Assembly (NCBI GenBank): GCA_047495785.1
Contig: JBLDXI010000020.1
Span: 1-64,000 of the forward strand
DNA: 64,000 bases
Reading direction: 5' to 3'
DNA from: Lepidodermella squamata
Taxonomy: Eukaryota > Animalia > Gastrotricha
Part shown: in pieces, positions 1 through 46,943 of the stretch
How positions within the stretch are numbered: position 1 is the first letter of the stretch
How the letters are laid out: every line of letters begins with the position of its first letter
The notes under the pieces: generated by a model
Seen by the model: only the letters and a program-made list of their open reading frames with translations
Databases searched by the model: none
What the model was told of the DNA's origin: nothing
Translations under genes and position numbers: made by a program

Positions 1-17
1 ACACATCTCGTGAGAGT
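1..17 (+). other. Probable residual PacBio barcoded overhang adapter (bc1003-like)
   Basis: ACACATCTCGTGAGAGT matches, from memory, PacBio bc1003 plus T overhang. It is exactly the part of the window start not mirrored in the inverted repeat (mirror breaks at 17/8471). Confidence 0.75.
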
Positions 18-1594
18 TACTTGGACGCGGAACTGGCGAGGCTAAAAATGGCAGAACACAAGTCTTCTGTATTATTGCAAACGGCTGCCATGTCACTGTG
101 AAGTCCGCGCTGACACCAAGCCCTTCTTTGTCAGCGGCCCTGTAAGTCGTAGCCAGAGCGTCATCCAGCGCTGCCTTGACCGGAGGTGTCGCCGACTCGT
201 ATATCTCCTTGAGGCTCAGCCATTTCTCCGCTGCTCTGGCCAGGTTAACAGTTATCTTTAGCCTCAACTTCTCGCCCACCAGTTTCAGCGACAGGTCGAC
301 CGCCTCATTGGCCAGCGGTTCATAGTCTAATATGTCGTTGTCGCAAACGATCTTCGCGATGTCACGAACTGCCGGGTCAGACAGAGGAGATAGACTCAAA
401 ACTTTGGTCTTGTAACCGTCCATGTCCTTGAACACACGGAACGTTTGACGCCAAAAATCATTGAAAAGTTGCGTAGCGCGTTCAGTCGAGTCGCCGCCGG
501 TTCGGTTCGTCGGGTTGAAAGCCGATAGAAAAGCCGTGAAGCGATCGTTCGAACTCGAGGACCGCCCATCATCCGAGCGACGATCGCCGTTCTGACCATC
601 GAAACGCTTCCGATTGTACTTGCCGTTACCGTTGCCGAATCGATTGTTGTGGTTACCAGGCATCTAAGAAGATATTAAACAAATTCATTAGTGAGTTGAA
701 CTAACATCGCACGTACGGCACAAGCAAATTGTTAGGGTTAGTTTAGGGTTAAATACCAGACAGGAAGCCTAAGCAACCCCGGCAAAGAGGCTCTAATGCA
801 GTTCAACCCGAATGAATTTTTTTAAAAGTGAGCTTACCATGTTCGTTGTTTCTTCCGCGGGGATAACGGACGATAATACACAAAGATTTTAACAGAATCT
901 AAAATACAGAAACAATACAAATTGCTAGTTACAAGTTAAGGTTACCAGAACCTTAAATCATTTGTTTATAATAAATCGCCAATGTAGACACTAACCATAA
1001 GTGCCTAAGGGTGTGGCTCAAAAAGGATAGGGTGTGAACCTTAAGTGGTTAAGCCTATACAGGCTATTCCGTATTTAAATCTCTCAATGCTGAGATCGAG
1101 ACCGAATAGGATTTATGGTTCGTAACCATATCCAGTTATGTGGTTCAATCCGACCATAAGTATATGAACCTTAACTTAGGTCAAGCTTCAGTTCAGGGCT
1201 CTTGCTGAACCTTAAGTTATTTAGACTTAAGATACCTTAAGTCGACCCTAAGTTATTTAGGGTCAGGATACCTTAAGTCAACCTGAGCAGCCAAGGTGCC
1301 ACCACAGTTGCGGGAAGCGTGTTTCTAAATGCCACCCATTAGGGGGAAGCCAACCGATTATGCCACCCGTTGAAGGGAAGCCGCAAATGTGATGCCACCC
1401 GTTGAAGGGAAGCCGCAAATGTGATGCCACCCGTTGAAGGGAAGCCGAAAAGGTAACGCCACCCTTTTAAGGGAAGCCGACAACAAAACGCCACCCATTA
1501 GAGGGAAGCCAAGCCACCCGTGGAGGGAAGCACCCGATAATTAAGTTGAGGAGCGGTATTCAGTGAAATAACAGAATGTAATGCTAGATATAGT

Positions 1595-1663
1595 AAGCAA
1601 CGCCCATAGTGTCAGACCGGTTTCGCCTGTGGGCAGCAGGCTCATCAGTGACTCTAGTTGCTT
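1595..1663 (-). ncRNA. Mirror copy of HHR1
   Basis: Reverse complement of 6824-6892 in the left arm. Confidence 0.8.
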
Positions 1664-3685
1664 AAAACAAAATCCGCTCGAATGACGAAAATGTTCGAAA
1701 ATGAGGCTTTTTATACTGCGGTCCCTTCCGCCATTTTGAAAAAAATCGTGGCACGTGGGTTTTGGCGCGAAATTTTTTCTAGAAACTGATGTTATTTTCA
1801 TAACTCGGTGGTGGTGGTTAGTTTATTTCCAAGGGTTGACACGTTTTGGAATTTATTGGCCGCAGGTGATTTCAAGGTCGCTTAGCCGCAGGCGATAGAC
1901 TTAGAGTTAAGGTTTCTTACTTATGATTTCTTATGTTAGAAGTCGTTTGACCCTAAGTTCGGTATCCAGCAACATAGTCGATTTAAGGTTACTGTATATT
2001 ATTTAAGGTTCTGTTGAGTTTCGCTGCTCGTTTAAGTCCTCAAACCATATGTTAGATTTATGGTTAAGGTTACCCATTATCCTTCCTTTAATATAAGCCC
2101 ATCCCCATAAAGTGGACTTAAGGTTAGAGTCCCATAGTTAGAGCAAATGTGCATTTCCGCGTTAGGTTCTGTAGTAAAACCTTAAGTTTTTGACTTAGGG
2201 TTAAGGTTCGGGAATACCTTTGGACTTGTTGTGTTTCTGTTCTTTTTATGGTTTATGGTTAGAGTTAAGGTTCATGCCCCTGAAAAAGTCGTAAAATGCT
2301 CAACAACATGTTTTTTTATTTCAGAACACTCATCAGTTACACTCACATGACACAGACACAAATTGTCTCAAAAATCACGCTTCTTCATGATTTCGGCGCG
2401 AAGGCGAAGACGTTCTTCATCCAGCGCCTGAGCCTGGCCTAGCAGCTCTTTTCCGTGCTTCTTCAGGAAGTGGCCAAGTAAGCCGTCCGATCTGGTGCAA
2501 GTAAAGGCGCACGATCCAACTCGGCAGAAGATAATTGATTCTTTCTCGCCAGAGGCTGTAGGAGGTTGCTCAACACGCTCCCAGATGAGGTCGCCGTCGT
2601 AGTTGGCGCGGAGTTGATCCCAAGCGAGGCTTTCGGCTACCGCTCTAGCCGAGCCCCCAGCTAATCTTCGACTCGTAGTGGCGGGTCCTCGAGCAGGGGT
2701 GCTGCGGATAGTGACCGTGCTACTACTGCTCGATGACAATGAGCGTTCTGCGAAAAGGTAAAGTTAAGGTTACGGTATTCAATAAAGAGAGTTTCTTACC
2801 CTCTAACGACGGAAGTGGTCGTTTGCGATTCGCTCTGTTGACCGTAGGTGCGGAAGACGAAGCCATTGACCAGTTGAAGCGGGGTGCTGGTGACGAGGCT
2901 GCCGAGCTTGTAGCGCTGCTAAGTTCCAGTGGAGTCGAGGTTGCTCCTCCTCTCAGAGGCCGTCCGAACAAGTCGATATCCACGAAAAGTTCGCGATCGA
3001 GACGGACAACACACTCTCTGGTCGACAGTTTCGGATCTGGAGTCTCCAGGGTCGTATCTGGTTGCAGAGTTCTATCCAGGCGTGAGTGCGATTCGTCGGG
3101 TAGCTGATCGTCAGCCTCGACCTCGATCGCGTCTTCAGTAGTCGAAATCACTGGTGAGTCGGCGATTTCGATGACGCTATCATGGTCGCTTTCCGGTGCC
3201 GCGCTGCTGGTGACGACTACGGGTCCGTCGGTGCCCCGGGCCAGCTCTGGTTCCAAGTTGACTTGGGCACCATCGTCCTCAAGGAGGTCGAGGGCCTCCT
3301 GTAAAGTAGCCGAGTCTGCAGCAGAAAAGCTCCCAAGGCCACTAAAGGTTGACGCGCACACTTCGGGACCGTTGCTCGCCGATGGTTGTTCGAGCCTGCG
3401 ACCAATGGTAACGGGGGAGGGGCAGGGGGCTCTCCAAGCCGACTCAGGAGCCCAGCGGCCGGTGTCGTACGTGACGCCGAAGTTGAAGAATCTCCAACTC
3501 GGTGAAGTCGTGTCAGCTGGAAATGTTGTTATAGGGTTACGGATGCAAAGAAAGGATAAAAAAGGCAAGTAAATTTGCACCAACTGTTTTATTTCTCACA
3601 AATGTTAGTATCATGTTGGATCATCGTCAAATGTCATTGTTCAGGGCCATAGTTGCATTGAATGATGTCTTGTGTTGTTGTTTCT

Positions 3686-4196
3686 TTAGCTCTGACCTAG
3701 AAATTCAGATTTAGTGAAACGTTTACGATTATTTTTATTAAGACGAAGAGCCATTTTTCCTTTCCTTCGGATTAGGCTGTACGCGGGTTGAAGTGCTTTA
3801 GCATAGTGTAAAACGTGCATTGTCTCGTAATTTTTCTTTTTCTCCCGGTTGTTGTTGATAAAGGGCCACGTTTTTCCCTCCAATTTTGACAAGGTGCTTT
3901 TTGTAACTTTTGTGAGTAGTGTCCATGAGTACCCCCGTTTAACCAAGCTGTTGAAAAGGGAGAGCGTTGCATATGCCCAATCTGAGAAGGTTGAGGCAAT
4001 TCTGCTGAAGCGTAGAATTTGGGATTCAATGACACCACTGAAAATGTGTTCCGGATGTTCCGATCCGTAACTGAGCAAGGCGAGGTTATCAGTAGGTTTG
4101 AAGTAGACGCCCGTTTCTAGCCTACCCTGTTTTTTATAGATAATCATATCCAAGTATTGGCCACTAATCTGGGAAGAGGTCACTTCAAGTTTGATA
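3686..4196 (-). CDS. Mirror copy of the PLE RT C-terminus (lacks YLDD)
   Basis: Identical translation; lies in the left arm of the inverted repeat. Confidence 0.7.
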
Positions 4197-4904: not shown

Positions 4905-6120
4905 TTGGTGCAAATTTACTTGCCTTTTTTATCCTTTCTTTGCATCCGTAACCCTATAACAACATTTCCAGCTGACACGACTTCACCGAGTTGGAGATTC
5001 TTCAACTTCGGCGTCACGTACGACACCGGCCGCTGGGCTCCTGAGTCGGCTTGGAGAGCCCCCTGCCCCTCCCCCGTTACCATTGGTCGCAGGCTCGAAC
5101 AACCATCGGCGAGCAACGGTCCCGAAGTGTGCGCGTCAACCTTTAGTGGCCTTGGGAGCTTTTCTGCTGCAGACTCGGCTACTTTACAGGAGGCCCTCGA
5201 CCTCCTTGAGGACGATGGTGCCCAAGTCAACTTGGAACCAGAGCTGGCCCGGGGCACCGACGGACCCGTAGTCGTCACCAGCAGCGCGGCACCGGAAAGC
5301 GACCATGATAGCGTCATCGAAATCGCCGACTCACCAGTGATTTCGGCTACTGAAGACGCGATCGAGGTCGAGGCTGACGATCAGCTACCCGACGAATCGC
5401 ACTCACGCCTGGATAGAACTCTGCAACCAGATACGACCCTGGAGACTCCAGATCCGAAACTGTCGACCAGAGAGTGTGTTGTCCGTCTCGATCGCGAACT
5501 TTTCGTGGATATCGACTTGTTCGGACGGCCTCTGAGAGGAGGAGCAACCTCGACTCCACTGGAACTTAGCAGCGCTACAAGCTCGGCAGCCTCGTCACCA
5601 GCACCCCGCTTCAACTGGTCAATGGCTTCGTCTTCCGCACCTACGGTCAACAGAGCGAATCGCAAACGACCACTTCCGTCGTTAGAGGGTAAGAAACTCT
5701 CTTTATTGAATACCGTAACCTTAACTTTACCTTTTCGCAGAACGCTCATTGTCATCGAGCAGTAGTAGCACGGTCACTATCCGCAGCACCCCTGCTCGAG
5801 GACCCGCCACTACGAGTCGAAGATTAGCTGGGGGCTCGGCTAGAGCGGTAGCCGAAAGCCTCGCTTGGGATCAACTCCGCGCCAACTACGACGGCGACCT
5901 CATCTGGGAGCGTGTTGAGCAACCTCCTACAGCCTCTGGCGAGAAAGAATCAATTATCTTCTGCCGAGTTGGATCGTGCGCCTTTACTTGCACCAGATCG
6001 GACGGCTTACTTGGCCACTTCCTGAAGAAGCACGGAAAAGAGCTGCTAGGCCAGGCTCAGGCGCTGGATGAAGAACGTCTTCGCCTTCGCGCCGAAATCA
6101 TGAAGAAGCGTGATTTTTGA
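4905..6120 (+). CDS. Accessory protein: acidic/Ser-rich region plus C-terminal C2H2-like zinc finger (spliced, intron 5689-5740)
   Basis: A phase-1 GTAAG...TTTTCGCAG intron joins ORFs 4905 and 5749 in frame; motif FCRVGSCAFTCTRSDGLLGHFLKKH. True start uncertain. Mirror copy at 2368-3583 (-). Confidence 0.6.
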
Positions 6121-6823: not shown

Positions 6824-6892
6824 AAGCAACTAGAGTCACTGATGAGCCTGCTGCCCACAGGCGAAACCGGTCTGACACTATGGGCGTTGCTT
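6824..6892 (+). ncRNA. Type-I hammerhead ribozyme HHR1
   Basis: GUCA-CUGAUGA-GCCUG(CUGCCCA)CAGGC-GAAA-CCGG-UC-UGAC; distal stem AAGCAAC/GUUGCUU; predicted cleavage after C6872. Confidence 0.92.
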
Positions 6893-6955: not shown

Positions 6956-7189
6956 GCTTCCCTCCACGGGTGGCTTGGCTTCCCTCTAATGGGTGGCGTT
7001 TTGTTGTCGGCTTCCCTTAAAAGGGTGGCGTTACCTTTTCGGCTTCCCTTCAACGGGTGGCATCACATTTGCGGCTTCCCTTCAACGGGTGGCATCACAT
7101 TTGCGGCTTCCCTTCAACGGGTGGCATAATCGGTTGGCTTCCCCCTAATGGGTGGCATTTAGAAACACGCTTCCCGCAACTGTGGTGGC
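6956..7189 (+). repeat. Array of 8 quasi-palindromic GCTTCCC-N5/6-GGGTGGC units with variable linkers
   Basis: Read directly; period about 31-32 nt; mirror at about 1299-1531. Confidence 0.9.
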
Positions 7190-7703
7190 ACCTTGGCTGC
7201 TCAGGTTGACTTAAGGTATCCTGACCCTAAATAACTTAGGGTCGACTTAAGGTATCTTAAGTCTAAATAACTTAAGGTTCAGCAAGAGCCCTGAACTGAA
7301 GCTTGACCTAAGTTAAGGTTCATATACTTATGGTCGGATTGAACCACATAACTGGATATGGTTACGAACCATAAATCCTATTCGGTCTCGATCTCAGCAT
7401 TGAGAGATTTAAATACGGAATAGCCTGTATAGGCTTAACCACTTAAGGTTCACACCCTATCCTTTTTGAGCCACACCCTTAGGCACTTATGGTTAGTGTC
7501 TACATTGGCGATTTATTATAAACAAATGATTTAAGGTTCTGGTAACCTTAACTTGTAACTAGCAATTTGTATTGTTTCTGTATTTTAGATTCTGTTAAAA
7601 TCTTTGTGTATTATCGTCCGTTATCCCCGCGGAAGAAACAACGAACATGGTAAGCTCACTTTTTAAAAAAATTCATTCGGGTTGAACTGCATTAGAGCCT
7701 CTT

Positions 7704-7757
7704 TGCCGGGGTTGCTTAGGCTTCCTGTCTGGTATTTAACCCTAAACTAACCCTAAC
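7704..7757 (+). other. Conserved 3'-terminal stem-loop (type A) plus short telomere-complementary seed
   Basis: TGCCGG-GGTTGCTTAGGCTTCC-TGT-CTGGTA followed by TAACCCTAAACTAACCCTAAC. Recurs at 12676-12728, 15889-15941 and, diverged, 17217-17292. Confidence 0.75.
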
Positions 7758-7824
7758 AATTTGCTTGTGCCGTACGTGCGATGTTAGTTCAACTCACTAA
7801 TGAATTTGTTTAATATCTTCTTAG

Positions 7825-8805
7825 ATGCCTGGTAACCACAACAATCGATTCGGCAACGGTAACGGCAAGTACAATCGGAAGCGTTTCGATGGTCAGAACG
7901 GCGATCGTCGCTCGGATGATGGGCGGTCCTCGAGTTCGAACGATCGCTTCACGGCTTTTCTATCGGCTTTCAACCCGACGAACCGAACCGGCGGCGACTC
8001 GACTGAACGCGCTACGCAACTTTTCAATGATTTTTGGCGTCAAACGTTCCGTGTGTTCAAGGACATGGACGGTTACAAGACCAAAGTTTTGAGTCTATCT
8101 CCTCTGTCTGACCCGGCAGTTCGTGACATCGCGAAGATCGTTTGCGACAACGACATATTAGACTATGAACCGCTGGCCAATGAGGCGGTCGACCTGTCGC
8201 TGAAACTGGTGGGCGAGAAGTTGAGGCTAAAGATAACTGTTAACCTGGCCAGAGCAGCGGAGAAATGGCTGAGCCTCAAGGAGATATACGAGTCGGCGAC
8301 ACCTCCGGTCAAGGCAGCGCTGGATGACGCTCTGGCTACGACTTACAGGGCCGCTGACAAAGAAGGGCTTGGTGTCAGCGCGGACTTCACAGTGACATGG
8401 CAGCCGTTTGCAATAATACAGAAGACTTGTGTTCTGCCATTTTTAGCCTCGCCAGTTCCGCGTCCAAGTACGGCTACGTCGACGCAGATGTTTTTGCGCT
8501 CGCCCACGACGTCATCACAAGTTGCGAAGGTCAAGACTGGCCGTTCCCACGCAATCGTGTCGACAACTTTCGCTACCAACAAGACTGGCGACCACCGGTC
8601 GAAACGAAGTTCGTTCGGCCACTACGGCCACTGTACGACATCGCACGCCGGCGACGCATTCGTCTCGTCACCCGACTCGGTCCAAGCGTTGTCAAGCAAC
8701 TCTGCCGAACGAAAGACTGCTAGCCGAACCAATCGACCAGTAGCCAGCGACGATGTCAAGAGTAGCAACAAAGCCACCGACCGTTTATTAATTATTCTTA
8801 ATTAA
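7825..8805 (+). CDS. Accessory ORF with N/R/G-rich N-terminus and helical core; probable upstream ATG micro-exon (7647-7649, intron 7650-7824)
   Basis: 326-aa ORF; ATG|GTAAG donor and TTCTTAG|ATG acceptor in phase 0. C-terminal frame is ambiguous (alternative ORF 8397-8723). Confidence 0.55.
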   Translation: MPGNHNNRFGNGNGKYNRKRFDGQNGDRRSDDGRSSSSNDRFTAFLSAFNPTNRTGGDSTERATQLFNDFWRQTFRVFKDMDGYKTKVLSLSPLSDPAVRDIAKIVCDNDILDYEPLANEAVDLSLKLVGEKLRLKITVNLARAAEKWLSLKEIYESATPPVKAALDDALATTYRAADKEGLGVSADFTVTWQPFAIIQKTCVLPFLASPVPRPSTATSTQMFLRSPTTSSQVAKVKTGRSHAIVSTTFATNKTGDHRSKRSSFGHYGHCTTSHAGDAFVSSPDSVQALSSNSAERKTASRTNRPVASDDVKSSNKATDRLLIILN

Positions 8806-9452
8806 TTCATTAGATTAATTACCACCATTACGCAGTATTATATGTTTCTCCACTAATGTTTTATAGCCTGTTCAACGCGGTATCGGCCAGTAACCCGCAG
8901 CGAGGTCTAATGTTCTGGACGTCAGCGAGTCATAGTCGCGCACGACCACGGCGGCCAAGCCATCCTGGTATCAACCAGTAACCCGCAGCGAGATCCAAAG
9001 TCGATAACGACCTTAGAATCGGCATATCCTGTTTTATGACTTTTATTGCTTTCAATACCTTGATGTCGCCGGCAATAACGCCTTGCGTCAGCTGTCAATC
9101 TTCTATTGGTCATCTTCATCATTGTAATTGTCGTCTCTCAACAGCACAGATGTCACGTTAGCTCGTCATCAAGGCCTCGCCAGCCTAGTAGCACACCTTG
9201 TTACCCATTTGGCTAGAATCACCGATTAACAAGTAGTGGCCACAACATCTGTGCGCTAATCCGATATAGTGCGCACACCTAGACGCACACCTGCCGTAGT
9301 TAACTTGAACTTAGTAACACGTGTGCGCGAAACAACACCTTGTAATCCTAATCCGCTGCGCCTAACATAGTCCGAGGCACACGCACCTGGTACGGTGTTA
9401 TCATAGCGCTGTCACAATAATGTCACTCGTTATAATTCTATCAGAAGTATGA

Positions 9453-9491
9453 TATTGGTACTGAAGAAATAGTGAAACCGGTCTACCAATA
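9453..9491 (+). ncRNA. Minimal type-I hammerhead ribozyme (helix II reduced to about 1 bp)
   Basis: UAUUGGUA-CUGAAGA-A(AUAG)U-GAAA-CCGG-UC-UACCAAUA; 8-bp stem I; palindromic ACCGGU stem III. Confidence 0.85.
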
Positions 9492-9500
9492 AATCTCGTT

Positions 9501-10583
9501 ATGTCTAACCGTAACCGTTTTGTTTCTAATAACAACGGGTTTACAGAAATTAACAACGACCGCCCGGGACGGGCCATCTTTGGCCGCTTCCGCTACGTCT
9601 ATTACAACTCGAGTCGTCACAATCCGCCCTATCAACAAGAACGGCGCGATCGTCATCAAAGCCGCTCGAAACAGACAGTCTCCGCAGCAGCGTCCAGTTC
9701 GAACACTCGATCTTACCGTTCGCACGAGGGTGCTACGCACGGCCGCTCCAGTCGCTCGCACGGGTCTGGTTCGAACGCTCAGTCAGACCGTCGGCACGCG
9801 GATGGTACGAAGCGACCGCAAGACTCAACGGACAACAGGCAGCTACCTTCTAAGGCAGCAGCAGAAGGGCAACGTCGAGCGAGGGAACATCGACAAGATC
9901 TCCTCGATCGCTTCCGCGAGAAACTCAACAATTTTATTCATCATTTCTTCATTTTAGCCAAGCTCGCCACAGCCAACTTCAGTGAAGACTACGCCAAACC
10001 TCAAAACGAGAGACCCACCACCGCTCACGAGAAGGCACTCCGGCCAGTGCTCGAGAAGTTTTTCCCGCGCGAGCATCGGTTCGAAGCTAGCACTCAGGGC
10101 ATCGTTGATTTGCTTTTTTACAATGTTGTTTCCGAGATACGTCATAAATCCATGACAGGACACGAGCAAGCTCTCGAAAGTGCGTTCACCGATGCACGCC
10201 AAGCAGCAAACTACTGCCATCCGTCGGACAGAGCGGCCCAAACGTCGCGGGTCTTCAACACTGTCGCGAGCAGCAACAGCGTGCTACGAGTCCTGCGCAA
10301 GTCGAGCAACATCTACTGGCCGGCGATCTACGAACAATTTCAATGCGCCTGCAACGAAATGAAACGCGCCATGCGCAGCCCTGACTTGCTCACCAACGTT
10401 ACGAAGGGCTGGCAGGCTTTTACTTATCACCTTGCGCAAAACAAAATACAGGCGGACCGCAGCTTACTAATTAACCCTAACCCTAACCCTAACCCTAACC
10501 CTAACCCTAACCCTAACCCTAACCCTAACCCTAACCCAACCCTAACCCTAACCCTAACCCTAACCCTAACCCTAATTTTCTGA
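9501..10583 (+). CDS. Accessory ORF (Arg/Ser/Gln-rich N-terminus, helical C-domain) reading into telomeric repeats
   Basis: 360-aa ORF, paralogous to ORF 11354 (MxxRNRxV...GxFRY; EKLxxFIxHF; GWQ...DRS). Ends in NPNPNP encoded by the telomere tract. Confidence 0.75.
   Translation: MSNRNRFVSNNNGFTEINNDRPGRAIFGRFRYVYYNSSRHNPPYQQERRDRHQSRSKQTVSAAASSSNTRSYRSHEGATHGRSSRSHGSGSNAQSDRRHADGTKRPQDSTDNRQLPSKAAAEGQRRAREHRQDLLDRFREKLNNFIHHFFILAKLATANFSEDYAKPQNERPTTAHEKALRPVLEKFFPREHRFEASTQGIVDLLFYNVVSEIRHKSMTGHEQALESAFTDARQAANYCHPSDRAAQTSRVFNTVASSNSVLRVLRKSSNIYWPAIYEQFQCACNEMKRAMRSPDLLTNVTKGWQAFTYHLAQNKIQADRSLLINPNPNPNPNPNPNPNPNPNPNPTLTLTLTLTLTLIF
10472..10575 (+). repeat. (TAACCC)n telomeric tract, about 17 units
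   Basis: Direct reading; one variant unit. Confidence 0.98.
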
Positions 10584-11078
10584 CACTGCGAAACATGTTC
10601 CTTATCACCAAAAAGAAATAAGAAAAAAGAAAAAATGATATTAATTTGTGTGCACCGACCGGGAGTCGATAGTGGATTTTCGTCATATTCAGGCTATAGA
10701 AAGCTCTAATCTTTGTAAAAAATAGCATGGCCTCCTAGGCTCATATCACAGGAAGTCCCGGAGGTGAAGATAATCACCCCGCTCCCTCCTGCCAAGCGTC
10801 AAGCCCTAAGGTCAAGTTGTTACGCTCAACCCGTCGGTTACCAAGACGGCTTATATTACGTCATGTCTATTGGTCTTATATATGTAAAATATCGCAAAGT
10901 TTATTATTTTCTTGCGCTCATCACGAATCTATTAATCTCTTGGTCTGACAAAAACTTTTGTTAAGCCGGTCAAGTCGCCGTCGAACAGCTGTAAAGGATT
11001 AAACTTTGTAACTATAGTTTGTGCTGTGCGACGCACAGCTGTTGTGCGCGCACCTAATTAACGCCGCGTTATAAGCGG

Positions 11079-11242
11079 CTTACTGCACAGGTGCTATCGC
11101 TACCGTTGTTAAGAAGTAGCGCCTAACTCGATCTTACTGCACAGGTGCGGTCGTTATCGCTGTTAAGATGCTGCGCCTAACTCGATCTTACTGCACAGGT
11201 GCCATCGTTATCGTTGTCAAGAAGTTGCGCCTAACTCGATCT
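11079..11242 (+). repeat. Three tandem 54-bp repeats, each containing CACAGGTG
   Basis: CTTACTGCACAGGTG...GCGCCTAACTCGAT x3, upstream of TATATA (11276) and the hammerhead at 11306. Confidence 0.85.
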
Positions 11243-11305
11243 CACCTGGGACCGGGCGGCGCAGCTTCCCTCATTTATATACGGTGAAAAAGTTGTTATT
11301 TTATC

Positions 11306-11341
11306 ATTGTCTCTGAAGAAACCTGAAACTAGTCAGACAAT
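11306..11341 (+). ncRNA. Minimal type-I hammerhead ribozyme
   Basis: AUUGUCU-CUGAAGA-A(ACC)U-GAAA-CUAG-UC-AGACAAU; palindromic ACUAGU stem III; ATG follows at 11354. Confidence 0.85.
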
Positions 11342-11353
11342 AAAACTTTTAAA

Positions 11354-12420
11354 ATGAATCACCGTAATCGTTATGTTACCGACAACTACGAAGGCTTTAC
11401 ATCGGCCAACTACGAACCAGCAAGGCGGTCTAACACAGGCCACTTTCGCTACAACTTCGTCAACTCGGCGGTAGCCGGTCGTTTAGCGCATCAGCGCCGA
11501 CCAGTTCAACGCCAGGAAGACAGTGTCAACTCGGCGGCAGCCGGTCGTTTAGCGCATCAGCGCCGACCAGTTCAACGCCAGGAAGACCGCGTCAACTCGG
11601 CGGAAGCCGGTCGTTTAGCGCATCAGCGCCGACCAGTTCAACGCCGGGAAGACCAAGTTCGCCATCGTCCCGAGCCCGAGCAACGCGCTCAAGCTCAACG
11701 CCACAACGGTCATGGCCGCCTTCGTCCCGAGCCAAGGCAGCGCTCTCCGCCTAGACAACAGTCGAGGCAAGCCCAGCCCGCTCAGACCAAGCCGGTCGAC
11801 CGTCAGCAACGCGACGCCAAGTATCGTCGGCTCATCCTCGAGCGATACTCAGAGAAGCTTGAATCCTTTATTAATCATTTTGTCATTCGAGCTCGTATTA
11901 GCACGGCCACCAACTGCGGTGGTCACACAGCACATGAAAATAATTTAGTTAAAAATATGTGCAAATTGTTTCCCTCAGATTCGCTCAACGCCGACGTCGT
12001 ACAAGTCCGGGACCAGTGGGTCAACAAGGCCATCAGCGAACTCCGTACTCGTTCGGGGTACGCTCGCTCCGTAGCCGCCCACGCCGTGTACGACGACGCG
12101 TCAGATGCGTTCAGGGGCTGTGCCAACCCCGCCGAAACAGCCGACTACGCCGCCCGCGCGTTCAACAAGGCGTGTCGTCAAGGCAGCACCGTGCAAGCAA
12201 TCCGTCAGATGCGCAATGTCAACTTGGGCGTGTCGAGGGAGAACTAGTCACCGCATGGAAAGCTGCGCTGTTCGCCATGAACGGCAAAAACCTGCGAGAC
12301 AACATTGTCTGCGGGTGGCAAGTTTTGCTTGAACAGCTAGCTCAATTTGATGAACCGAAGGACCGTAGTAACCCTACTAACCCTAACCCTAACCCTAACC
12401 CTAACCCTAACCCTAACCCT
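11354..12420 (+). CDS. Accessory ORF paralogous to ORF 9501, with three 22-aa repeats; frameshift/stop near 12245
   Basis: GAGAACTAGTC here vs GAGAACTTTGTC in the copy near 16711. The intact frame continues ...LRDNIVCGWQ...DRSNPTNPNP into telomeric repeats. Confidence 0.7.
12369..12420 (+). repeat. (TAACCC)n telomeric tract
   Basis: Direct reading. Confidence 0.97.
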
Positions 12421-12728
12421 TAGTTTTGGTTCAACTAAAGTGTGGTTCTACACTAATTGTTAACCTCAATCTTATGGTTCGGGTTCAATTAAGGCTTTTG
12501 TCTGGATGGAACTTTAAGTTATGGTTCCACGCACGACTTACGTTCAACCTTTATTTCAATTGATCATTGAAATCGGTTTAGCCCATCACCTTACTCTGCT
12601 GCTAATCCACAGATTAAAAAGTGGTTTACTCTCCTCTCACCGTTGCTAGAGTGAAATAGATCGCTAGAGCTTTTATGCCGGGGTTGCTTAGGCTTCCCGT
12701 CTGGTAATTAACCTAACCCAACCCTAAC
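12420..12728 (+). repeat. Direct repeat of 15633-15941 (pLTR-like 3' segment)
   Basis: Near-identical, offset 3213. Confidence 0.93.
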
Positions 12729-13666
12729 ACTGGCTCGTGTCGTGAGTACGGCGACCCCCTAACCCTTAGACGGCCTCTTAACATACACTTTGATGGAACT
12801 TTTCTCCATCAAAACTTATTCAGGCTCAACCTGCTAGGATGACATGGAGCCTTCTTCGGGCTATAATTACCCTGCTTTTATGCTGAGGGAAAAGGGCTAA
12901 GCAATATGACTAAACAAGCTACTGTGGGACAGTCATCAATTAACCGATTGACTCCACATTTGGATTAGTAGTGAGCTATGTCAGTACCGCATCTATGGTT
13001 TGTTGGTATCGTAATCCCGGGAACAACGATTAGTGCGGTCATTAGACTCACTACACTCATGAACGATCAATTGACTGTGCGTGCACAGGCAATGACGACC
13101 GATTGGAATCATTCTATGATCCACTAATGCTTAGACTTTCCCACAACAGACAGTAAAAAGTTGATATAAGTTTGTTGTAACTAGGGTAGAGATTATCAAA
13201 CTGTCATCTATGTTGTATGTAGAGAGTTCGAGGATGAAATATCTTATCCAGCGACAGGAGTAAGAAACCTCGATTCAAAGGAACACGATGGACAACAACA
13301 TATCGGATGTCTCGGACTACTAAACGAGATGATCTCAATAGAGACCAATAGACAATGACGCATGTTGTGTATTTAGAAACCATGGCCAGAGAACAGTGAA
13401 CTTTAACAGTTAACACTAAAGCTGCAAATACACTGAGTAGTGAACCTTAACTCTTAGCCTGTAGCCTGCGGCTAATTAATTTTAAAGCATGTCAACTCTT
13501 GGAAATAGGCCAAGTTCAAGCAAAATATTACGAAAATTATATCAAATCTTGAAAGAATTTTCGCGCCAGAACCCACATGGCACTAACATTTAAAGAACGT
13601 AAGAGAACGCGGTTTGTAAGGCCGTGCTTTGGAGAAATTCTGTCATTCGAGTGGATTTTGTTTTGA

Positions 13667-13732
13667 GCAACTAAAGTCACTGATGAGCCTGCTGCCCACA
13701 GGCGAAACCGGTCTGACTATTCTGGGCGTTGC
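13667..13732 (+). ncRNA. Type-I hammerhead ribozyme HHR3
   Basis: AGUCA-CUGAUGA-GCCUG(CUGCCCA)CAGGC-GAAA-CCGG-UC-UGACU; distal GCAAC/GUUGC. Confidence 0.92.
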
Positions 13733-13764
13733 GTATTTTCCATCGTCTACTTGTGATATCCTGG

Positions 13765-13980
13765 GCCATCCTTCCATGGGTGGTGCTTTTCCTTGTTGCT
13801 CCCCTCAATGGGTGGCTTGTACTCATTGTGCTCCCCTATACGGGTGGCATTTCATGTTTGCTCCCCTGCACGGGTGGCTTGAATCCATCGATGCTCCCCT
13901 TTATGGGTGGCCTGAATTTGAATCCATTGGTGCTCCCCTTTACGGGTGGCTTGAAACCTTTGGTGCCTTCCTTCGCGGGT
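13765..13980 (+). repeat. Array of about 7 GCTCCCC-N5-GGGTGGC units (paralog of 6956-7189)
   Basis: Direct reading; linkers differ from those of array 1. Confidence 0.88.
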
Positions 13981-14111
13981 GAATTGCCATCCCGCTATAC
14001 TCCTCGAGTAATGGAACTAGACGTGGTTCCTAGCATGCCTAAAACCTTAACTTTCATGTTTTGGTTCAAGTAAGGTTTCCTTCTCTAAGGAACCTTAGGT
14101 TATGGTTCTAC

Positions 14112-15290
14112 ATTTTATTTTATTTATTTATTTATTTTATACCGGCTTGCAATCAATCTCAAGGATTATTAGCAATCAAAGGCGCCTCACTGTAGATATC
14201 AAAAACTTCGTATTATCCAAGTTATCAACAAACAATTTAAAATTAGCTAAAGAGCCATTAACAATGTCTAAAGGCAGCTTGTTCCATAATATTACATACC
14301 TTCTAAGAAAAGAGAACTTAAAGCAGTCTCTGTGGCACATAGGCAATGAGAGCCTGTGCGTGTCAGCATATTTGTTGCTGGATTTGTTAAAAAATAAACC
14401 AAAATCAACATCAACAAAACCACGATATAATTTAAACATTAGTATCAAGTCACGTTGACAACGTCTATTTTCGAGAGTTTTCATGCTAAACATTTGGAGT
14501 AGGACTTTGTAGTCAGTCACCCTGTAACCTGTCATCCTTTTCAGGAAATTATGCAGAACTGATTCGAGCCGACTGATTACTGTTAGCAGATATGGAGAAT
14601 ACACAGTGGAAGCATAGTCGAGGTGTGGCATTACATAGACATTAAAAGCCTTAAGTCGTAGACTATTCGATTTGAAAGTTCGCAAAATGAATCCCGAAAT
14701 CCTGTTGCACTTGGCAATAATTTTAGAGCAGTGCGATTTAAAATTTAGATTCTCGTCTACCTCAATTCCGAGGTCTCGGATCGATTTAACAAACTCGATC
14801 TCGTGACCATTTATTGAGTACTTGAAATTAGCAACTTCAGCAGATTTCTTGCCGTTGAGGCGGAGAACAAAACATTTTTGGCTATTAATGTTAAGCCCAT
14901 TGTCGGCAAACCATTCGATGATATTGTTCAAATCAGCTTGAAGACTGTGACAATCTTCCACACAAGATATCTTATTATAGATCTTAGTGTCGTCGGCGAA
15001 GTACTTAGTTAAAGAAGTCCTTATACAGTCATCAGTGAATAGCAAGTACACAACGAACAGCAAGGGTCCAAGGACGGAGCCCTGTGGCACTCCAGATGGA
15101 ATATCAAATTTGCTAGATACCGAGTTGTTTATCAGAACTTTAAAACTCCTGCCGTATAGGTAACTTTTCAGCCAGTTAATGAGATTACCACACACATTAA
15201 TCTCTTCAAGCTTGCTAATTAATATATGAATAGGTACGGAGTCTACAAGCTTGCTAATTAATATATGAATAGGTACGGAGTCAAAAACTG
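14112..15290 (-). mobile_element. 5'-truncated non-LTR retrotransposon (CR1/L2/Jockey-type RT, ORF 14176-15195) inserted in the telomeric element
   Basis: SGVPQGSVLGPLLF, YFADDTKIY, DLGI motifs; (TAAA)n tail at 14112-14138; about 38-bp tandem duplication at the 5' junction (about 15208-15282). Confidence 0.88.
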
Positions 15291-15376
15291 GGATAAAAGG
15301 GATGAGTTACGTAGATCAGCTGCGGGAAGAGCCAACTCAGATCGACGAGGGCGGCATATACGATAAACATCAATAC

Positions 15377-15745
15377 ATACATTGTTGACCTCAACTTTAT
15401 AGTTGTGGTTCAATTAAGGTTGCCTTCTCTAAGGAACCTTAAGACATGGTTCTACTTACATTGCTGACCTCAACTTTATAGTTGTGGTTCAATTAAGGTC
15501 TCACTCTCTATGGAACCTTAAGTTGTGTTCTACACACTTTGTTAACCTTAACCTTATGGTTTTGGTTCAATTAAGGTCTCCGTCTGGATGGAACCTTAAG
15601 TTGTAGTTCTACACACATTGTTGACCTCAACTTTAGTTTTGGTTCAACTAAAGTGTGGTTCTACACTAATTGTTAACCTCAATCTTATGGTTCGGGTTCA
15701 ATTAAGGCTTTTGTCTGGATGGAACTTTAAGTTATGGTTCCACGC
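15377..15745 (+). repeat. Degenerate ~80-bp tandem repeats rich in AACCTTAA/TTAAGGTT
   Basis: Recurring GTTGACCTCAACTT...GGTTCAATTAAGGT...GGAACCTTAAG. The same array begins at about 14043, before the LINE insertion. Confidence 0.8.
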
Positions 15746-15921
15746 ACGACTTACGTTCAACCTTTATTTCAATTGATCATTGAAATCGGTTTAGCCCATC
15801 ACCTTACTCTGCTGCTAATCCACAGATTAAAAAGTGGTTTACTCTCCTCTCACCGTTGCTAGAGTGAAAGGGATCGCTAGAGCTTTTATGCCGGGGTTGC
15901 TTAGGCTTCCCGTCTGGTAAT

Positions 15922-16009
15922 TAACCTAACCCAACCCTAACCCTAACCCTAACCCTAACCCTAACCCTAACCCTAACCCTAACCCTAACCCTAACCCTAA
16001 CCCTAACCC
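15922..16009 (+). repeat. (TAACCC)n telomeric tract capping the next 5'-truncated unit
   Basis: Direct reading. Confidence 0.97.
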
Positions 16010-16896
16010 CAGCCGGTCGTTTAGCGCATCAGCGCCGACCAGTTCAACGCCAGGAAGACCGCGTCAACTCGGCGGAAGCCGGTCGTTTAGCGCATCAGCG
16101 CCGACCAGTTCAACGCCGGGAAGACCAAGTTCGCCATCGTCCCGAGCCCGAGCAACGCGCTCAAGCTCAACGCCACAACGGTCATGGCCGCCTTCGTCCC
16201 GAGCCAAGGCAGCGCTCTCCGCCTAGACAACAGTCGAGGCATGCCCAGCCCGCTCAGACCAAGCCGGTCGACCGTCAGCAACGCGACGCCAAGTATCGTC
16301 GGCTCATCCTCGAGCGATACTCAGAGAAGCTTGAATCCTTTATTAATCATTTTGTCATTCGAGCTCGTATTAGCACGGCCACCAACTGCGGTGGTCACAC
16401 AGCACATGAAAATAATTTAGTTAAAAATATGTGCAAATTGTTTCCCTCAGATTCGCTCAACGCCGACGTCGTACAAGTCCGGGACCAGTGGGTCAACAAG
16501 GCCATCAGCGAACTCCGTACTCGTTCGGGGTACGCTCGCTCCGTAGCCGCCCACGCCGTGTACGACGACGCGTCAGATGCGTTCAGGGGCTGTGCCAACC
16601 CCGCCGAAACAGCCGACTACGCCGCCCGCGCGTTCAACAAGGCGTGTCGTCAAGGCAGCACCGTGCAAGCAATCCGTCAGATGCGCAATGTCAACTTGGG
16701 CGTGTCGAGGGAGAACTTTGTCACCGCATGGAAAGCTGCGCTGTTCGCCATGAACGGCAAAAACCTGCGAGACAACATTGTCTGCGGGTGGCAAGTTTTG
16801 CTTGAACAGCTAGCTCAATTTGATGAACCGAAGGACCGTAGTAACCCTACTAACCCTAACCCTAACCCTAACCCTAACCCTAACCCTGAGGTTTGA
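16010..16896 (+). pseudogene. 5'-truncated, telomere-capped copy of ORF 11354 (intact 3' frame)
   Basis: Near-identical to 11538-12420 (offset 4472); begins abruptly after telomeric repeats and ends in tract 16842-16887. Confidence 0.88.
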
Positions 16897-16957
16897 AGTC
16901 ACTGATGAGCTACCTTAGCCAAGTAGCGAAACCGGTCTGACAAATTAGGCTAACCTC
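16888..16957 (+). ncRNA. Type-I hammerhead ribozyme HHR4
   Basis: GUCA-CUGAUGA-GCUAC(CUUAGCCAA)GUAGC-GAAA-CCGG-UC-UGAC; distal GAGGUU/AACCUC. Confidence 0.92.
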
Positions 16958-17261
16958 TTCATTTCTTGCTTCAAGTATCCATGTTGTATCATAATACTTT
17001 GCAGTCTTCCCATTGTCGTAATCTCTGCGGAGAGTTACGCTCAAAAACATTTCCTCTACGCAGCCTCTACGGAGTGTAGCGATCAGAACAGAGTATTTTA
17101 CGCAGCCTCTACGGAGTGTAGCGTATTTACGAATGGTCAGTATGCGTTAAACATACTAGTACCCATATAACCTTCAAGTTGTTCCCAAGTCGTTGGGTTA
17201 CAGGATTAGGACTCTTTGCCGGGGTTCTTTCATAAGAAACCTGTCTGGTATTCACATTGAT

Positions 17262-17292
17262 CTAACCCTAACCCTAACCCTAACCCCAACCC
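17262..17292 (+). repeat. (TAACCC)n telomeric tract
   Basis: Direct reading, preceded by a type-A stem-loop at 17217-17250. Confidence 0.93.
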
Positions 17293-19454: not shown

Positions 19455-19519
19455 GAGGTTAAAGTTACTGATGAGCTACACTAGCCAAGTAGCGAAACCG
19501 GTCTGACGATGGCTACCTC
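19455..19519 (+). ncRNA. Type-I hammerhead ribozyme HHR5
   Basis: GUUA-CUGAUGA-GCUAC(ACUAGCCAA)GUAGC-GAAA-CCGG-UC-UGAC; distal GAGGU/ACCUC. Confidence 0.9.
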
Positions 19520-23986: not shown

Positions 23987-24153
23987 GGGTTAGGGTTAGG
24001 GTTAGTAGGGTTACTGCGGTCCTCCTGTGCTTTTTCTGTTTGCGCTAGTGCTTTCCAGCCGTCGACGACGTTGTCGCGTAATGTGCTACTTTACATGGCC
24101 TGCATGAACGCGCGACACGCCTGGTCGTACTGCGCTGGTGTGGCTGATGAGTC
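23987..24153 (-). mobile_element. Interstitial inverted 3' fragment of the telomeric accessory-ORF family with short telomeric tail
   Basis: Minus strand translates to ...LRDNVVDGWKALAQTEKAQEDRSNPTNPNPNP, homologous to the end of ORF 11354/16010. Confidence 0.82.
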
Positions 24154-25044
24154 GCTATGACAGCCCTTATCAAAGCCCATATATCGTCACAATTTCGCTG
24201 GTGTGATGTAAAATCTATTTCGATTCATAAGTAGGTAACTGTCATAGAAACCACAGCAATAAAAGCATGCGACCTCTACTTGCTGTTGTGCCTTTATATA
24301 TGGTGACATTTACGTTTTCCTCATTCCTATTTTTTCCAAGCATCAAAAAGTTCGACTAAATTTCGTCATTATGTTGTTTCTGCTGGGTGCTTCAGTTTGT
24401 TGTTCGATAAACACTTTTGAATTGCGCGTGATGGCGTACTTCGAAGCTGACTCTAGCCGTAACACCAAACTTGTGTCAATCCTTTTCATTCCACAGTCTA
24501 TTTCTTATCATCCATCGCATCAGACTGCGCAGAAAAGCACCATTTGCCACTAAAAATTCACCTTAGTAATTTTCAAATTGAAATGTGTCGAAAGCTGATT
24601 GGCTGACGGCAGTTACTCAAAATACCAGCTTTTTCTATGACAGGGAGAAACGGCAGCGCAGCGCTGGTGGAGAAGAAGCGAAGATTACAGGGGAAAGAAG
24701 AGGAAGATTTATCGATTGTTTTCTTTATTCCGTTCATCGTAATTTCCACCTTCAACAACATTTTGTCATTTTGTCACTTCTTATAAATCGTTGACGACGA
24801 CGACGACAATATAAAGCACGCAGACCCGTGCAACGGTGTTCGAATAGACAAAAGTATTAATAAAAACAACAGCTTCATTTTACAATAGCTTGTAATAATG
24901 AGAAGATCATAATAATAATAATGATTTAATAACAACGGTGACAATCATCAAAATAATGTAGCTAATAATACAAGTAATGATCAATCGAACAGTTTTGAGA
25001 GTTGTTCCAAAATATTTAAGTTTTAGCAAAGTGATATTATAATA

Positions 25045-45112: not shown

Positions 45113-45908
45113 GCGATCGAGAGAACTTGTAAGAAGACTATGGATGTTCGCTCAAAACCCGCTCAAAAAATTTCAGCGGGACTAGTCACAAAATTACACA
45201 AATACCTTGAAACGTGAATAAAACGGTACTTCTTCTGTATAAGCTCTTGTTCTCAGACCTGGAGGCAATCGCTCAGGCAATCGCAACTAAATACGCAAAC
45301 CACAGGCTACTTGTCGCTCATCGACCTCGCGACGCCGTCTCCGACTATTTCTTAAAAAGCCAGCCCATCGAACTTGCGAGGATTCTGCTTTAAACTCTCC
45401 CGATTTCCATTCGGGCGAAGCGAGCATGTCCGAGCGAAATTCGGACAAAAGATTTCAGTTTTATTGCTATTGCTATTGCTATTTGTTCACTTTCAACAAT
45501 TATGAAAGGACCGACGATATAGCGCGACACATATCCACCAGATATTTTATTATTTATGCAAATTGCAAAATTAATTTTTAAAACTCTAAAAATATTAGAA
45601 TTTGAATCTTTTAAAGTATTCTTCGATATTTGTTTGCCGCGTGACTTCAGCCCCAACTTTCTTCTTGATCTTTTCTCATCTTCGGCATGTCCATCTCGAT
45701 AATCGTTGTACGCGTTAGTGCGCTGGAGCAGCGTTGTCGCCTGCCCAGTCCACCCTCGCATTTGCAAGCCGTCCAGTGCCGGTATGTTGAGTCGCGATTC
45801 TGCGTCACAGATTATGGAGATTCGCGTGTCAACGAGCTACTTCTACCATTCAGCCGCTTTGCCGACAACAAAAAGATCGGTCTAAACGTGAAAGAGGTCG
45901 CTGTCCGA

Positions 45909-46940: not shown

Positions 46941-46943
46941 GTT

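What the first reader, a model, noticed from the sequence alone, without database searches (positions are those of the whole stretch)
10440..16896. Accessory ORFs have no stop codon before the telomere: priming seed inside coding sequence
Seen: ORF 9501 (...ADRSLLINPNP), ORF 11354/16010 (...KDRSNPTNPNP) and the diverged fragment at 23987 (...EDRSNPTNPNP) all join (TAACCC)n a few bases after a conserved GGACCGYAG, always in the Asn-Pro frame. Inference: the mRNA's own coding end carries a telomere-complementary seed (TAACCCTACTAACCC) used to anneal to the G-overhang. Integrated copies would encode poly-(NP) or poly-(TL) tails templated by telomeric DNA.
Basis: partly seen in the sequence, partly recalled or inferred. 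Interest (0 to 1): 0.75.

Follow-up and report, generated by a model that had tools for sequence, protein, structure and literature searches.

The report
Telomere-priming seed inside a retroelement gene
The "genes without a stop codon" are cut-off end copies of the first gene of a telomere-attaching jumping element, ending at a ten-base telomere-matching seed that intact copies read as Asn-Pro-Asn, so one stretch probably serves as both protein code and chromosome-end docking site.

Summary
ORF 9501, ORF 11354 with its copy at 16012, and the fragment at 24022(-) all run into (TAACCC)n in the Asn-Pro frame without a stop. The junction point is fixed within each family: 11 such junctions genome-wide and no control hits.

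These are not complete accessory genes. They are the last, partial copy of ORF1 (about 320 codons) in head-to-tail arrays of an endonuclease-less Penelope-like retroelement with the order ORF1 then RT.

Full ORF1 copies at other contig ends read through the same seed. They continue for 380-500 more codons (linker plus zinc finger), end in a normal stop and overlap the RT gene.

The seed T-AAC-CCT-AAC is invariant at the nucleotide level in three families here and in eight of nine diverged relatives from other assemblies. Some of those relatives also end in telomere repeats. Units within one array are 99.96-100% identical.

A helix-II-poor hammerhead with covarying helix I sits before each ORF1 start. 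A covarying hairpin lies 22-25 nt 3' of the seed.

Most likely the telomeric G-overhang pairs with the in-frame seed and primes cDNA synthesis. This step is inferred, not shown.

Other notes of this scan cover this same stretch and call it Athena/Terminon-like; the in-ORF seed did not appear in the notes I could read.

The parts
8397..8723 (+). Remnant of the C-terminal part of the family-A reverse transcriptase. It is fused upstream to an unrelated ORF1-like N-terminus (7825-8400) by a deletion or chimeric join at about 8407.
   Evidence: Window 8407-10575 aligns at 98.8% to the RT C-terminus, spacer and ORF1N of the C54 array. The translation matches the RT C-terminus seen.
9454..9490 (+). 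Mini-hammerhead 11 nt upstream of the family-A ORF1 ATG. It has the CTGAAGA and GAAAC cores, a 7-bp helix I and the palindromic ACCGGT in helix III. Helix II is almost absent.
   Evidence: The same motif is found in 10 of 10 elements, with 6-7 bp of helix I of different sequence in each. Rfam does not call it.
9501..10471 (+). Family-A ORF1 N-terminal domain (323 codons), present here as the terminal partial copy.
   Evidence: It is 99-100% identical to the first 323 codons of the 817-835-aa ORF1 at C54, C21 and C46. The AlphaFold model of residues 125-323 is all-alpha with pLDDT 88.8.
10472..10575 (+). Seed TAACCCTAAC (10472-10481), continuous and in phase with a 17-unit (TAACCC) telomere tract.
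   Evidence: Full copies have the same 10 nt followed by TCTCTTTCTCAGGTC....
10576..11353 (+). 5' region of the family-B1 unit. It contains three 54-bp repeats (11079-11242) and a mini-hammerhead at 11306-11341.
11354..12376 (+). Family-B1 ORF1 N-terminal domain, frameshifted near 12245. It contains three 66-bp repeats at 11458-11654.
   Evidence: It is 99.7% identical to the copy at 16010-16887.
12369..12420 (+). B1 seed (TAACCCTAC TAACCC...) merging into a 7-unit telomere tract.
15925..16009 (+). Telomere tract capping the 5'-truncated B1 copy. This is the healing-type junction.
16010..16887 (+). B1 ORF1N copy, 5'-truncated, with an intact frame from 16012. Its seed and 6-unit tract lie at 16842-16887. 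The first stop (TGA) is at 16894-16896, in the neighbouring unit.
16898..16940 (+). Canonical-type hammerhead belonging to the next, older unit and not to the ORF.
   Evidence: Pattern match. The same hammerhead follows the family-A short form at C54.
23987..24170 (-). Decayed interstitial fragment of a B-type ORF1N, inverted, ending with the seed and three repeats.

Best explanation
The window is a subtelomeric stack of endonuclease-deficient Penelope-like retroelements (Athena/Coprina kind) in an invertebrate with TTAGGG telomeres.

One clade of these elements has a unit of about 4.8-4.9 kb. Its order is: mini-hammerhead, ORF1 (helical N-domain, in-frame seed, disordered linker, zinc finger), an overlapping RT, then a spacer.

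Genomic copies are arrays longer than one unit (about 1.26 to 2 units). No telomere repeats separate the units. Every array stops at the seed of a final, partial ORF1, where it joins (TAACCC)n.

Shown: the architecture, the fixed in-phase junction, read-through of the seed in full copies, conservation of the seed at the nucleotide level, and the polarity (sense 5' end facing the chromosome tip).

Inferred: the telomeric G-overhang base-pairs with the seed in the element's RNA, and the RT extends it, copying everything 5' of the seed. Sequence 3' of the seed is therefore never copied, and the last ORF1 is left without a stop.

Also inferred: the identical units in each array come from copying one template more than once. 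This could happen on a hammerhead-processed circular RNA or by end-to-end template jumps. Erosion of the outward-facing 5' ends would explain why seed-terminated ORF1N stubs are the commonest remains.
For: - Full against short forms.
- C57 array: telomere tract, a 267-nt leader, ORF1 of 701 aa, RT of 603 aa, a spacer, then leader plus ORF1N up to the seed, then a telomere tract. It carries a 1,230-bp terminal direct repeat that is 100% identical, and the right edge of that repeat is the seed.
- C54 array: RT C-terminus, ORF1 of 817 aa, RT of 608 aa, short ORF1N, 18 repeats, then a hammerhead.
- C46 array: about 2 units. The units are identical over 1,399 and 2,481 bp. C54 units match at 2,474 of 2,475 bp. 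Identity between arrays is 98.8%.
- Polarity: all copies lie at contig ends with the 5' end outward. Contig C41 starts with terminal (ACCCTA)n on the same strand as the ORF.
- Seed conservation: T-AAC-CCT-AAC is present in 3 families here and in L067, L068, L069, L070, L071, L072, L073 and L076. Given Asn-Pro-Asn, this spelling has probability 0.02-0.06 per element, and a second NPN in L067 is spelled differently.
- Short forms in other organisms' assemblies: L070, L072 and L074/P0029.
- Hairpin 22-25 nt 3' of the seed: 91.8% of cells paired, 4 pairs with compensatory changes, and 0 of 500 shuffles reach the score.
- Literature: EN-deficient PLEs are described as priming on G-overhangs through reverse-complement telomere repeats (PMC8557442, PMC6431247). 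Penelope pLTRs include the start of the ORF (PMC3846280).
Against: - No RNA data are available. The template RNA, its 3' end and any circular form are unseen.
- The B1 family has no full-length or RT-bearing copy among the hits, so its seed is seen only in the joined state.
- Short forms could be inherited from short-form templates that already carried repeats, rather than primed anew at an internal seed each time.
- A stem that would enclose the seed (GGACC...GGTCC) is no better than shuffled sequence (Fisher p = 0.54).
- C21 and C46 may be copies of the same region, so the count of independent arrays is smaller than it looks.
- L075 has a degenerate seed (CTAACCCTACC).
Confidence: 0.75

Rival explanations
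1. The stop-less ORF is the element's normal accessory gene, its mRNA ends in the seed, and NP or TL tails templated by the telomere are part of the product.
For: The short ORFs are open into the repeats. Each has its own ATG and an upstream hammerhead. A public gene call (P0029) even has such a tail.
Against: Full ORF1 copies continue for 380-500 codons past the seed to a conserved zinc finger and a stop, both in this genome and in relatives. The short copies are truncated at random 5' points or frameshifted. Tail length and the stop are set by whatever DNA lies next.
Confidence: 0.07
2. A DNA-level event rather than priming. Recombination, slippage or single-strand annealing between the 10-21-nt internal seed and a telomere tract deleted the distal part of ORF1.
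For: It would give the same fixed, in-phase junction. Palindromic rearrangements are present at these contig ends.
Against: Full units show no canonical 3' end with a telomere tract downstream of the RT that could recombine with the seed. The same terminal architecture recurs in at least 3 families and in other organisms. Nucleotide-level conservation of the seed argues that it is used.
Confidence: 0.12
3. Chromosome breakage inside the ORF followed by telomerase healing.
For: Telomerase healing does occur here at the other end of units: 5'-truncated copies are capped by repeats at random points.
Against: The polarity is wrong. The ORF lies distal to its repeat tract, so it was added onto a telomere and not healed. 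Junction positions are invariant.
Confidence: 0.02
4. The seed region is a micro-intron (GTAGT ... CTAAC branch point ... pyrimidine tract ... CAG|GTC, 35-41 nt), and its conservation reflects splicing signals.
For: A donor-like GTAG(T/A), branch-like CTAAC and an acceptor-like tract are present in B1, B2, L067 and L076.
Against: There is no GT donor in family A, L068, L073 or L075. The candidate lengths (35, 38, 41 nt) would shift the frame, whereas the unspliced frame carries the conserved zinc-finger domain.
Confidence: 0.04

Closest known systems
Athena and Coprina endonuclease-deficient Penelope-like elements (Gladyshev and Arkhipova 2007, as summarised in PMC8557442 and PMC3846280)
   Same: ORF1 plus a PLE-type RT without a GIY-YIG domain. 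They are confined to chromosome ends with the 5' end outward. Their 5' truncations are capped by telomere repeats, their 3' end joins reverse-complement telomere repeats, and they carry hammerhead motifs.
   Different: In the published description the short telomere-complementary stretch is non-coding and sits next to the 3' hammerhead. Here it is an in-frame Asn-Pro-Asn in the middle of ORF1, about 1 kb downstream of the hammerhead, and the element ends in a partial ORF1. Placement in the Athena or Coprina clade was not tested.
Terminons (Arkhipova et al. 2017, summarised in PMC6431247)
   Same: Chains of units at telomeres, the logic of a hammerhead plus a C-rich seed, and host genes lying between units.
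   Different: Terminons are up to 40 kb and carry many accessory genes. These units are 4.8-4.9 kb with only ORF1 and RT.
Penelope pLTRs and partial tandems (PMC3846280)
   Same: A terminal direct repeat arises from a partial tandem. The pLTR contains the hammerhead and the start of the ORF.
   Different: The Penelope pLTR holds 12-22 codons. Here the repeat holds about 320 codons, and its right edge is defined by a telomere seed rather than by a target-site junction.
Telomerase RNA template
   Same: A 10-11-nt stretch of about 1.7 repeats, internal to the RNA, against which a G-rich 3' end aligns for an RT that the literature calls the sister clade of TERT (PMC8557442). The resemblance to the vertebrate template sequence is recalled from memory.
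   Different: There is no evidence of repeated copying of the seed. The RT copies onward through kilobases, and the seed lies in an mRNA.
Drosophila HeT-A / TART telomeric arrays (PMC5537684)
   Same: Head-to-tail telomeric retroelement arrays, 5' ends lost by terminal erosion, and a 3' portion that may serve the neighbouring unit.
   Different: Those are non-LTR elements with poly(A) ends in a host that has no telomerase repeats and no sequence-specific seed.

Membership tests
Endonuclease-deficient Penelope-like elements (Athena/Coprina kind) | PLE-type reverse transcriptase | tested here: met
   RVT_1 match at E = 4.5e-7. [quoted passage not shown] Precomputed Pfam entries DUF8422 and HTH_animal are shared with those relatives.
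Endonuclease-deficient Penelope-like elements (Athena/Coprina kind) | No GIY-YIG endonuclease domain | tested here: met
   The RT ORF of 603-608 aa ends after the thumb region, and Pfam finds only RVT_1. The next feature downstream is the spacer and then ORF1.
Endonuclease-deficient Penelope-like elements (Athena/Coprina kind) | At chromosome ends, with 5' truncations capped by telomere repeats | tested here: met
   Nearly all copies lie within about 25 kb of contig ends. Capped 5' truncations are seen at window 16010, C41:1223 and C46.
Endonuclease-deficient Penelope-like elements (Athena/Coprina kind) | 3' end joined to reverse-complement telomere repeats | tested here: met
   Eleven junctions genome-wide against 0 control hits.
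Endonuclease-deficient Penelope-like elements (Athena/Coprina kind) | Telomere-complementary stretch immediately next to the 3' hammerhead | tested here: not met
   The hammerhead lies 11-90 nt before the ORF1 ATG, and the seed lies about 0.8-1 kb further 3', inside the ORF. This is the feature that makes the clade a variant.
Endonuclease-deficient Penelope-like elements (Athena/Coprina kind) | Phylogenetic placement within the Athena or Coprina RT clade | not tested
   No reference Athena or Coprina RT sequences were available through the tools.
Terminons | Giant units (over 10 kb, up to 40 kb) with multiple accessory ORFs | tested here: not met
   Unit length is 4,810-4,945 bp, with only ORF1 and RT.
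Penelope-type pLTR / partial-tandem architecture | Terminal direct repeat that includes the hammerhead and the ORF start | tested here: met
   A 1,230-bp repeat, 100% identical, in C57 that includes the hammerhead and ORF1 codons 1 to about 320.
Hammerhead ribozyme (type I, minimal) | Conserved CUGANGA and GAAA cores, helices I-III, and self-cleavage | tested here: inconclusive
   The cores and a 6-7-bp covarying helix I are present in 10 of 10 elements, and helix III is palindromic. Helix II is reduced to 0-1 bp, and Rfam gives no hit. Cleavage cannot be tested here.

The most novel reading that the evidence does not exclude
The ORF1 mRNA carries an internal module that works like a telomerase-RNA template. 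The module is a 10-11-nt seed of about 1.7 telomere repeats plus a conserved hairpin just 3' of it. The element's TERT-related RT would align the chromosome's G-overhang on this internal site, as telomerase does on its template. The module could then be a living analogue of the step from Penelope-like elements to telomerase, possibly acting on a hammerhead-circularised unit RNA copied by rolling circle. Nothing here shows repeated copying of the seed or a circular RNA.
Probability: 0.07. Interest if true: 0.9.

Novelty: new variant of a known kind. Interest (0 to 1): 0.6.

Why it matters
Endonuclease-less Penelope-like elements are described as the closest relatives of telomerase. How they dock on chromosome ends has so far been inferred from non-coding 3' tails.

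In this clade the docking sequence is dual-coded. It is Asn-Pro-Asn in the structural gene and, very probably, the primer-alignment site. It is kept letter for letter across elements whose proteins have diverged to 20-35% identity.

This gives a clean experimental handle: synonymous recoding of three codons should abolish telomere attachment without changing the protein.

It also explains a class of odd gene calls, proteins with NP or TL repeat tails, that already sit in public databases. Finally, it suggests that priming occurs at an internal RNA site, as in telomerase.

Tried and rejected
- Rfam search, at gathering thresholds and by E-value, found no hammerhead. The motifs were found by pattern search instead.
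- ORF1N has no Pfam or PHROGs family and no hit in the word-indexed protein search. The exhaustive profile search gave only 5 representatives.
- The AlphaFold model is confident and all-helical, but Foldseek (best E = 0.47) and VIA-align (best Z = 7.4) gave only generic helical matches.
- A stem enclosing the seed (GGACC/GGTCC, with apparent covariation in L067 and L076) is not longer than in shuffled flanks. I dropped it.
- The micro-intron reading was rejected: donors are missing in four lineages and the frame argues against it.
- Organism identity was not established. A Shaw-type K-channel fragment found only generic invertebrate hits. "Rotifer" comes from other scan notes and is untested here.
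- The two key papers (PNAS 2007, MBE 2017) are not held, so I could not check whether in-ORF seeds were noted there.
As a result the C21 and C46 arrays have small unread gaps, and C57 was not read beyond position 209013.
Full report
**1. What is in the window**

The window is the first 64 kb of contig C20 of a 121-Mb animal assembly. Positions 7.6-20 kb hold a stack of short units on the + strand, each ending in (TAACCC)n.

Three ORFs and one fragment run into these tracts without a stop, always as Asn-Pro repeats:
- 9501-10583.
- 11354-12423, frameshifted near 12245.
- 16012-16896, which is 5'-truncated and itself preceded by a repeat tract.
- A decayed inverted fragment at 24022-23987.

GGACCGYAG precedes the tract in each case. 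Genome-wide, the pattern GACCGYAG + 0-15 nt + three repeats finds 11 distinct junctions, and a reversed control pattern finds none. Within each family the junction is at the same base and in phase with the repeat. The DNA after the tract differs from site to site. The observation therefore stands.

**2. Master copies exist and change the reading**

Protein searches of the whole assembly found copies whose open frame is 701-843 aa rather than about 330 aa. In these copies the seed is followed by unique sequence. Family A reads ...ATT AAC CCT AAC TCT CTT TCT CAG GTC.... Family B2 reads ...ACT AAC CCT AAC CCT TTT CTT TCT CAG GTC....

The frame stays open through a low-complexity linker to a Cys/His zinc-finger tail and a normal stop. 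The stop-less ORFs are the first 317-323 codons of this larger gene. Five such read-through sites were found by pattern search, again with zero control hits.

**3. Architecture of the element**

I merged overlapping loci and annotated the sense strand.

- C57 reads: telomere tract, a 267-nt leader, ORF1 of 701 aa, an RT of 603 aa overlapping the end of ORF1 by 137 nt, a spacer, then leader plus ORF1 codons 1 to about 320, then the seed and seven repeats. The two leader-plus-ORF1N segments are 1,230 bp long and 100% identical. The right edge of this terminal repeat is the seed.
- C54 reads: RT C-terminus, ORF1 of 817 aa, RT of 608 aa, short ORF1N, 18 repeats, then a hammerhead of the next unit.
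- C46 holds about two units of 4,945 bp. The array starts at a random 5' truncation capped by some 45 repeats and again ends at the seed.

No telomere repeats occur at the internal seeds. Units within an array are identical (1,399/1,399 and 2,481/2,481 bp in C46; 2,474/2,475 bp in C54). Different arrays of the same family differ by about 1.2%.

In the window, ORF 9501 is preceded by the same RT C-terminal remnant and spacer as in C54 (98.8% identity over 2.2 kb).

The B1 family (11354 and 16012) is found only as seed-terminated stubs truncated at different 5' points. No full-length or RT-bearing B1 copy was among the hits.

**4. Polarity excludes healing**

Nearly all copies lie near contig ends, with the sense 5' end toward the end. 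The exceptions are a few decayed interstitial fragments and inverted duplicates.

Contig C41 begins with terminal (ACCCTA)n on the same strand as its ORF1N copy. The ORF is thus distal to the tract it joins, meaning it was added onto a pre-existing telomere. The opposite junction, a tract followed by a 5'-truncated element, is the healing-type one, and its position is random.

**5. What kind of element**

The RT has an RVT_1 match. Sixteen relatives at 35-62% identity were found in metagenome assemblies. [quoted passage not shown]

The RT here has no endonuclease domain. Together with the telomeric behaviour, this is the endonuclease-deficient PLE kind, described as docking on G-overhangs through reverse-complement telomere repeats next to a hammerhead (PMC8557442, PMC6431247, PMC3846280). 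Units of 4.8-4.9 kb with two genes are not Terminons.

A terminal repeat that includes the ORF start is known for Penelope pLTRs, where it covers 12-22 codons (PMC3846280). Here it covers about 320 codons.

**6. The seed is conserved as nucleotides**

Contigs carrying RT relatives (L067-L073) and ORF1N relatives (L074-L076, P0025-P0029) show the same gene order, ORF1 then RT then ORF1. At the end of the N-domain, eight of nine external elements and all three families here spell T-AAC-CCT-AAC. L075 is degenerate.

Given Asn-Pro-Asn and each element's own codon usage, this spelling has a probability of 0.02-0.06 per element. A second NPN in L067 is spelled CCA-AAC-CCC-AAC. The elements are related, so the product (about 1e-15) overstates the case. 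Even so, their proteins are only 16-34% identical, which implies saturated synonymous sites.

Three external records (L070, L072, L074/P0029) are short forms that end in telomere repeats. L074 is flanked by repeats on both sides, exactly like window 16010-16887.

**7. Other RNA features**

A compact hammerhead-like motif lies 11-90 nt upstream of every ORF1 ATG examined. Its form is CTGANGA, 4-6 nt, GAAAC, NNGTY. Helix I is 6-7 bp long and differs in sequence in each of ten elements. Helix III is palindromic (ACCGGT, ACTAGT or ACGCGT), the arrangement described for dimer-acting PLE hammerheads (PMC4209133). Helix II is almost absent.

A 7-bp hairpin 22-25 nt 3' of the seed shows covariation: 91.8% of cells are paired, four pairs carry compensatory changes, no shuffle out of 500 reaches the score, and the slid controls are much lower. 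Across nine elements, hairpins in this position are stronger than in shuffles (Fisher p = 0.005). This hairpin overlaps a conserved Pro-Arg peptide and rests on seven sequences, so I treat it as probable, not proven. It is absent from the short forms.

A stem that would enclose the seed is not supported.

**8. Mechanism**

Shown: the anatomy, the polarity and the conservation described above.

Inferred: the G-overhang pairs with the seed in the element's RNA, and the RT extends it toward the RNA 5' end. Sequence 3' of the seed, including the hairpin, the rest of ORF1 and its stop, is not copied.

Because the hairpin lies 3' of the seed, the template probably extends beyond the seed. Priming would then be internal, as in telomerase. 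Arrays longer than one unit and made of identical units fit repeated copying of one template. This could occur on a hammerhead-processed and ligated circular RNA, as proposed for retrozymes linked to PLEs (bioRxiv 10.64898/2026.07.22.740005), or by end-to-end template jumps. Read-through transcripts of existing tandems cannot be excluded. Terminal erosion removes the outward 5' parts, which would explain why ORF1N-seed stubs dominate.

**9. The protein**

The N-domain (residues 125-323 of family A) is modelled with confidence as a helical bundle with long helices (pLDDT 88.8, pTM 0.81). It has no informative structural neighbour and no Pfam family. It is the N-terminal half of ORF1, not an accessory gene.

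**10. Verdict**

The finding is a new variant of the Athena/Coprina kind. Whether the two papers I could not read already mention in-ORF seeds is unknown.

Noticed in passing
window 1-887 versus 7600-8470; also 1360-1510 versus 7008-7127: The start of the contig is an inverted duplicate (99.9% identical) of 7600-8470, so the contig end is a large palindrome. Similar inverted duplications sit at the ends of C21, C54 and C15.
   Followed up: partly
window 7690-7760, 12660-12730, 15870-15940, 17210-17290: A second type of 3' terminus (GCCGGGGTTGCTTAGGCTTCCCGTCTGGTA + TTAACC) belongs to another element family. At 7740-7760 it is followed by only about 2.5 telomere-like units and then the next unit. 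Elsewhere it merges into long tracts.
   Followed up: no
window 6839-6867, 13680-13708, 16902-16932, 19468-19498, 1620-1648(-): Five canonical-looking hammerhead cores (CTGATGAG, helix II, CGAAAC CGGTC) occur against 0.09 expected. None reaches an Rfam threshold. Two independent units (16888 and C54) are capped by telomere repeats a few bases upstream of this hammerhead.
   Followed up: partly
L063+L052 composite (C57), sense positions 1234-1252 and 6044-6062: The left edge of the 1,230-bp terminal repeat is GATTAGGGATTAGGGATTA, a G-strand-like motif in sense orientation. At the 5' copy it directly abuts the C-rich telomere tract, giving a head-to-head telomere-like junction. Its meaning is unknown.
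   Followed up: no
window 10576-10600: The B1 unit starts TTTTC TGACACTGCGAAAC. The TCTGACACT part resembles the sequence just after the cleavage site of the canonical hammerhead at 6867, so the 5' end may lie at a ribozyme cut. Only one copy has this end.
   Followed up: no
C57 composite 3467-3603; C54 composite 3764-3915: The RT frame opens 137-152 nt before the ORF1 stop, in another frame and with no ATG. RT expression therefore needs a frameshift, a small splice or reinitiation. Other scan notes propose splicing in other families.
   Followed up: no
window 32262-32368 (-): Rfam K_chan_RES (potassium-channel RNA editing signal) is matched at the gathering score (51.4 against 51 bits), inside a Shaw-type K-channel exon.
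   Followed up: no
window 14176-15195 (-) and 45687-50341 (+): Other retroelement pieces are present: an antisense RVT_1 fragment inside the stack, and a LINE-like ORF1 / endonuclease-RT further in.
   Followed up: no
L068 (JGI 3300043403 contig), both ends: The first and last ~100 bases of this 4.3-kb metagenome contig are the same sequence. That is expected if the assembler closed a tandem or terminally redundant ORF1-RT unit into a circle.
   Followed up: partly
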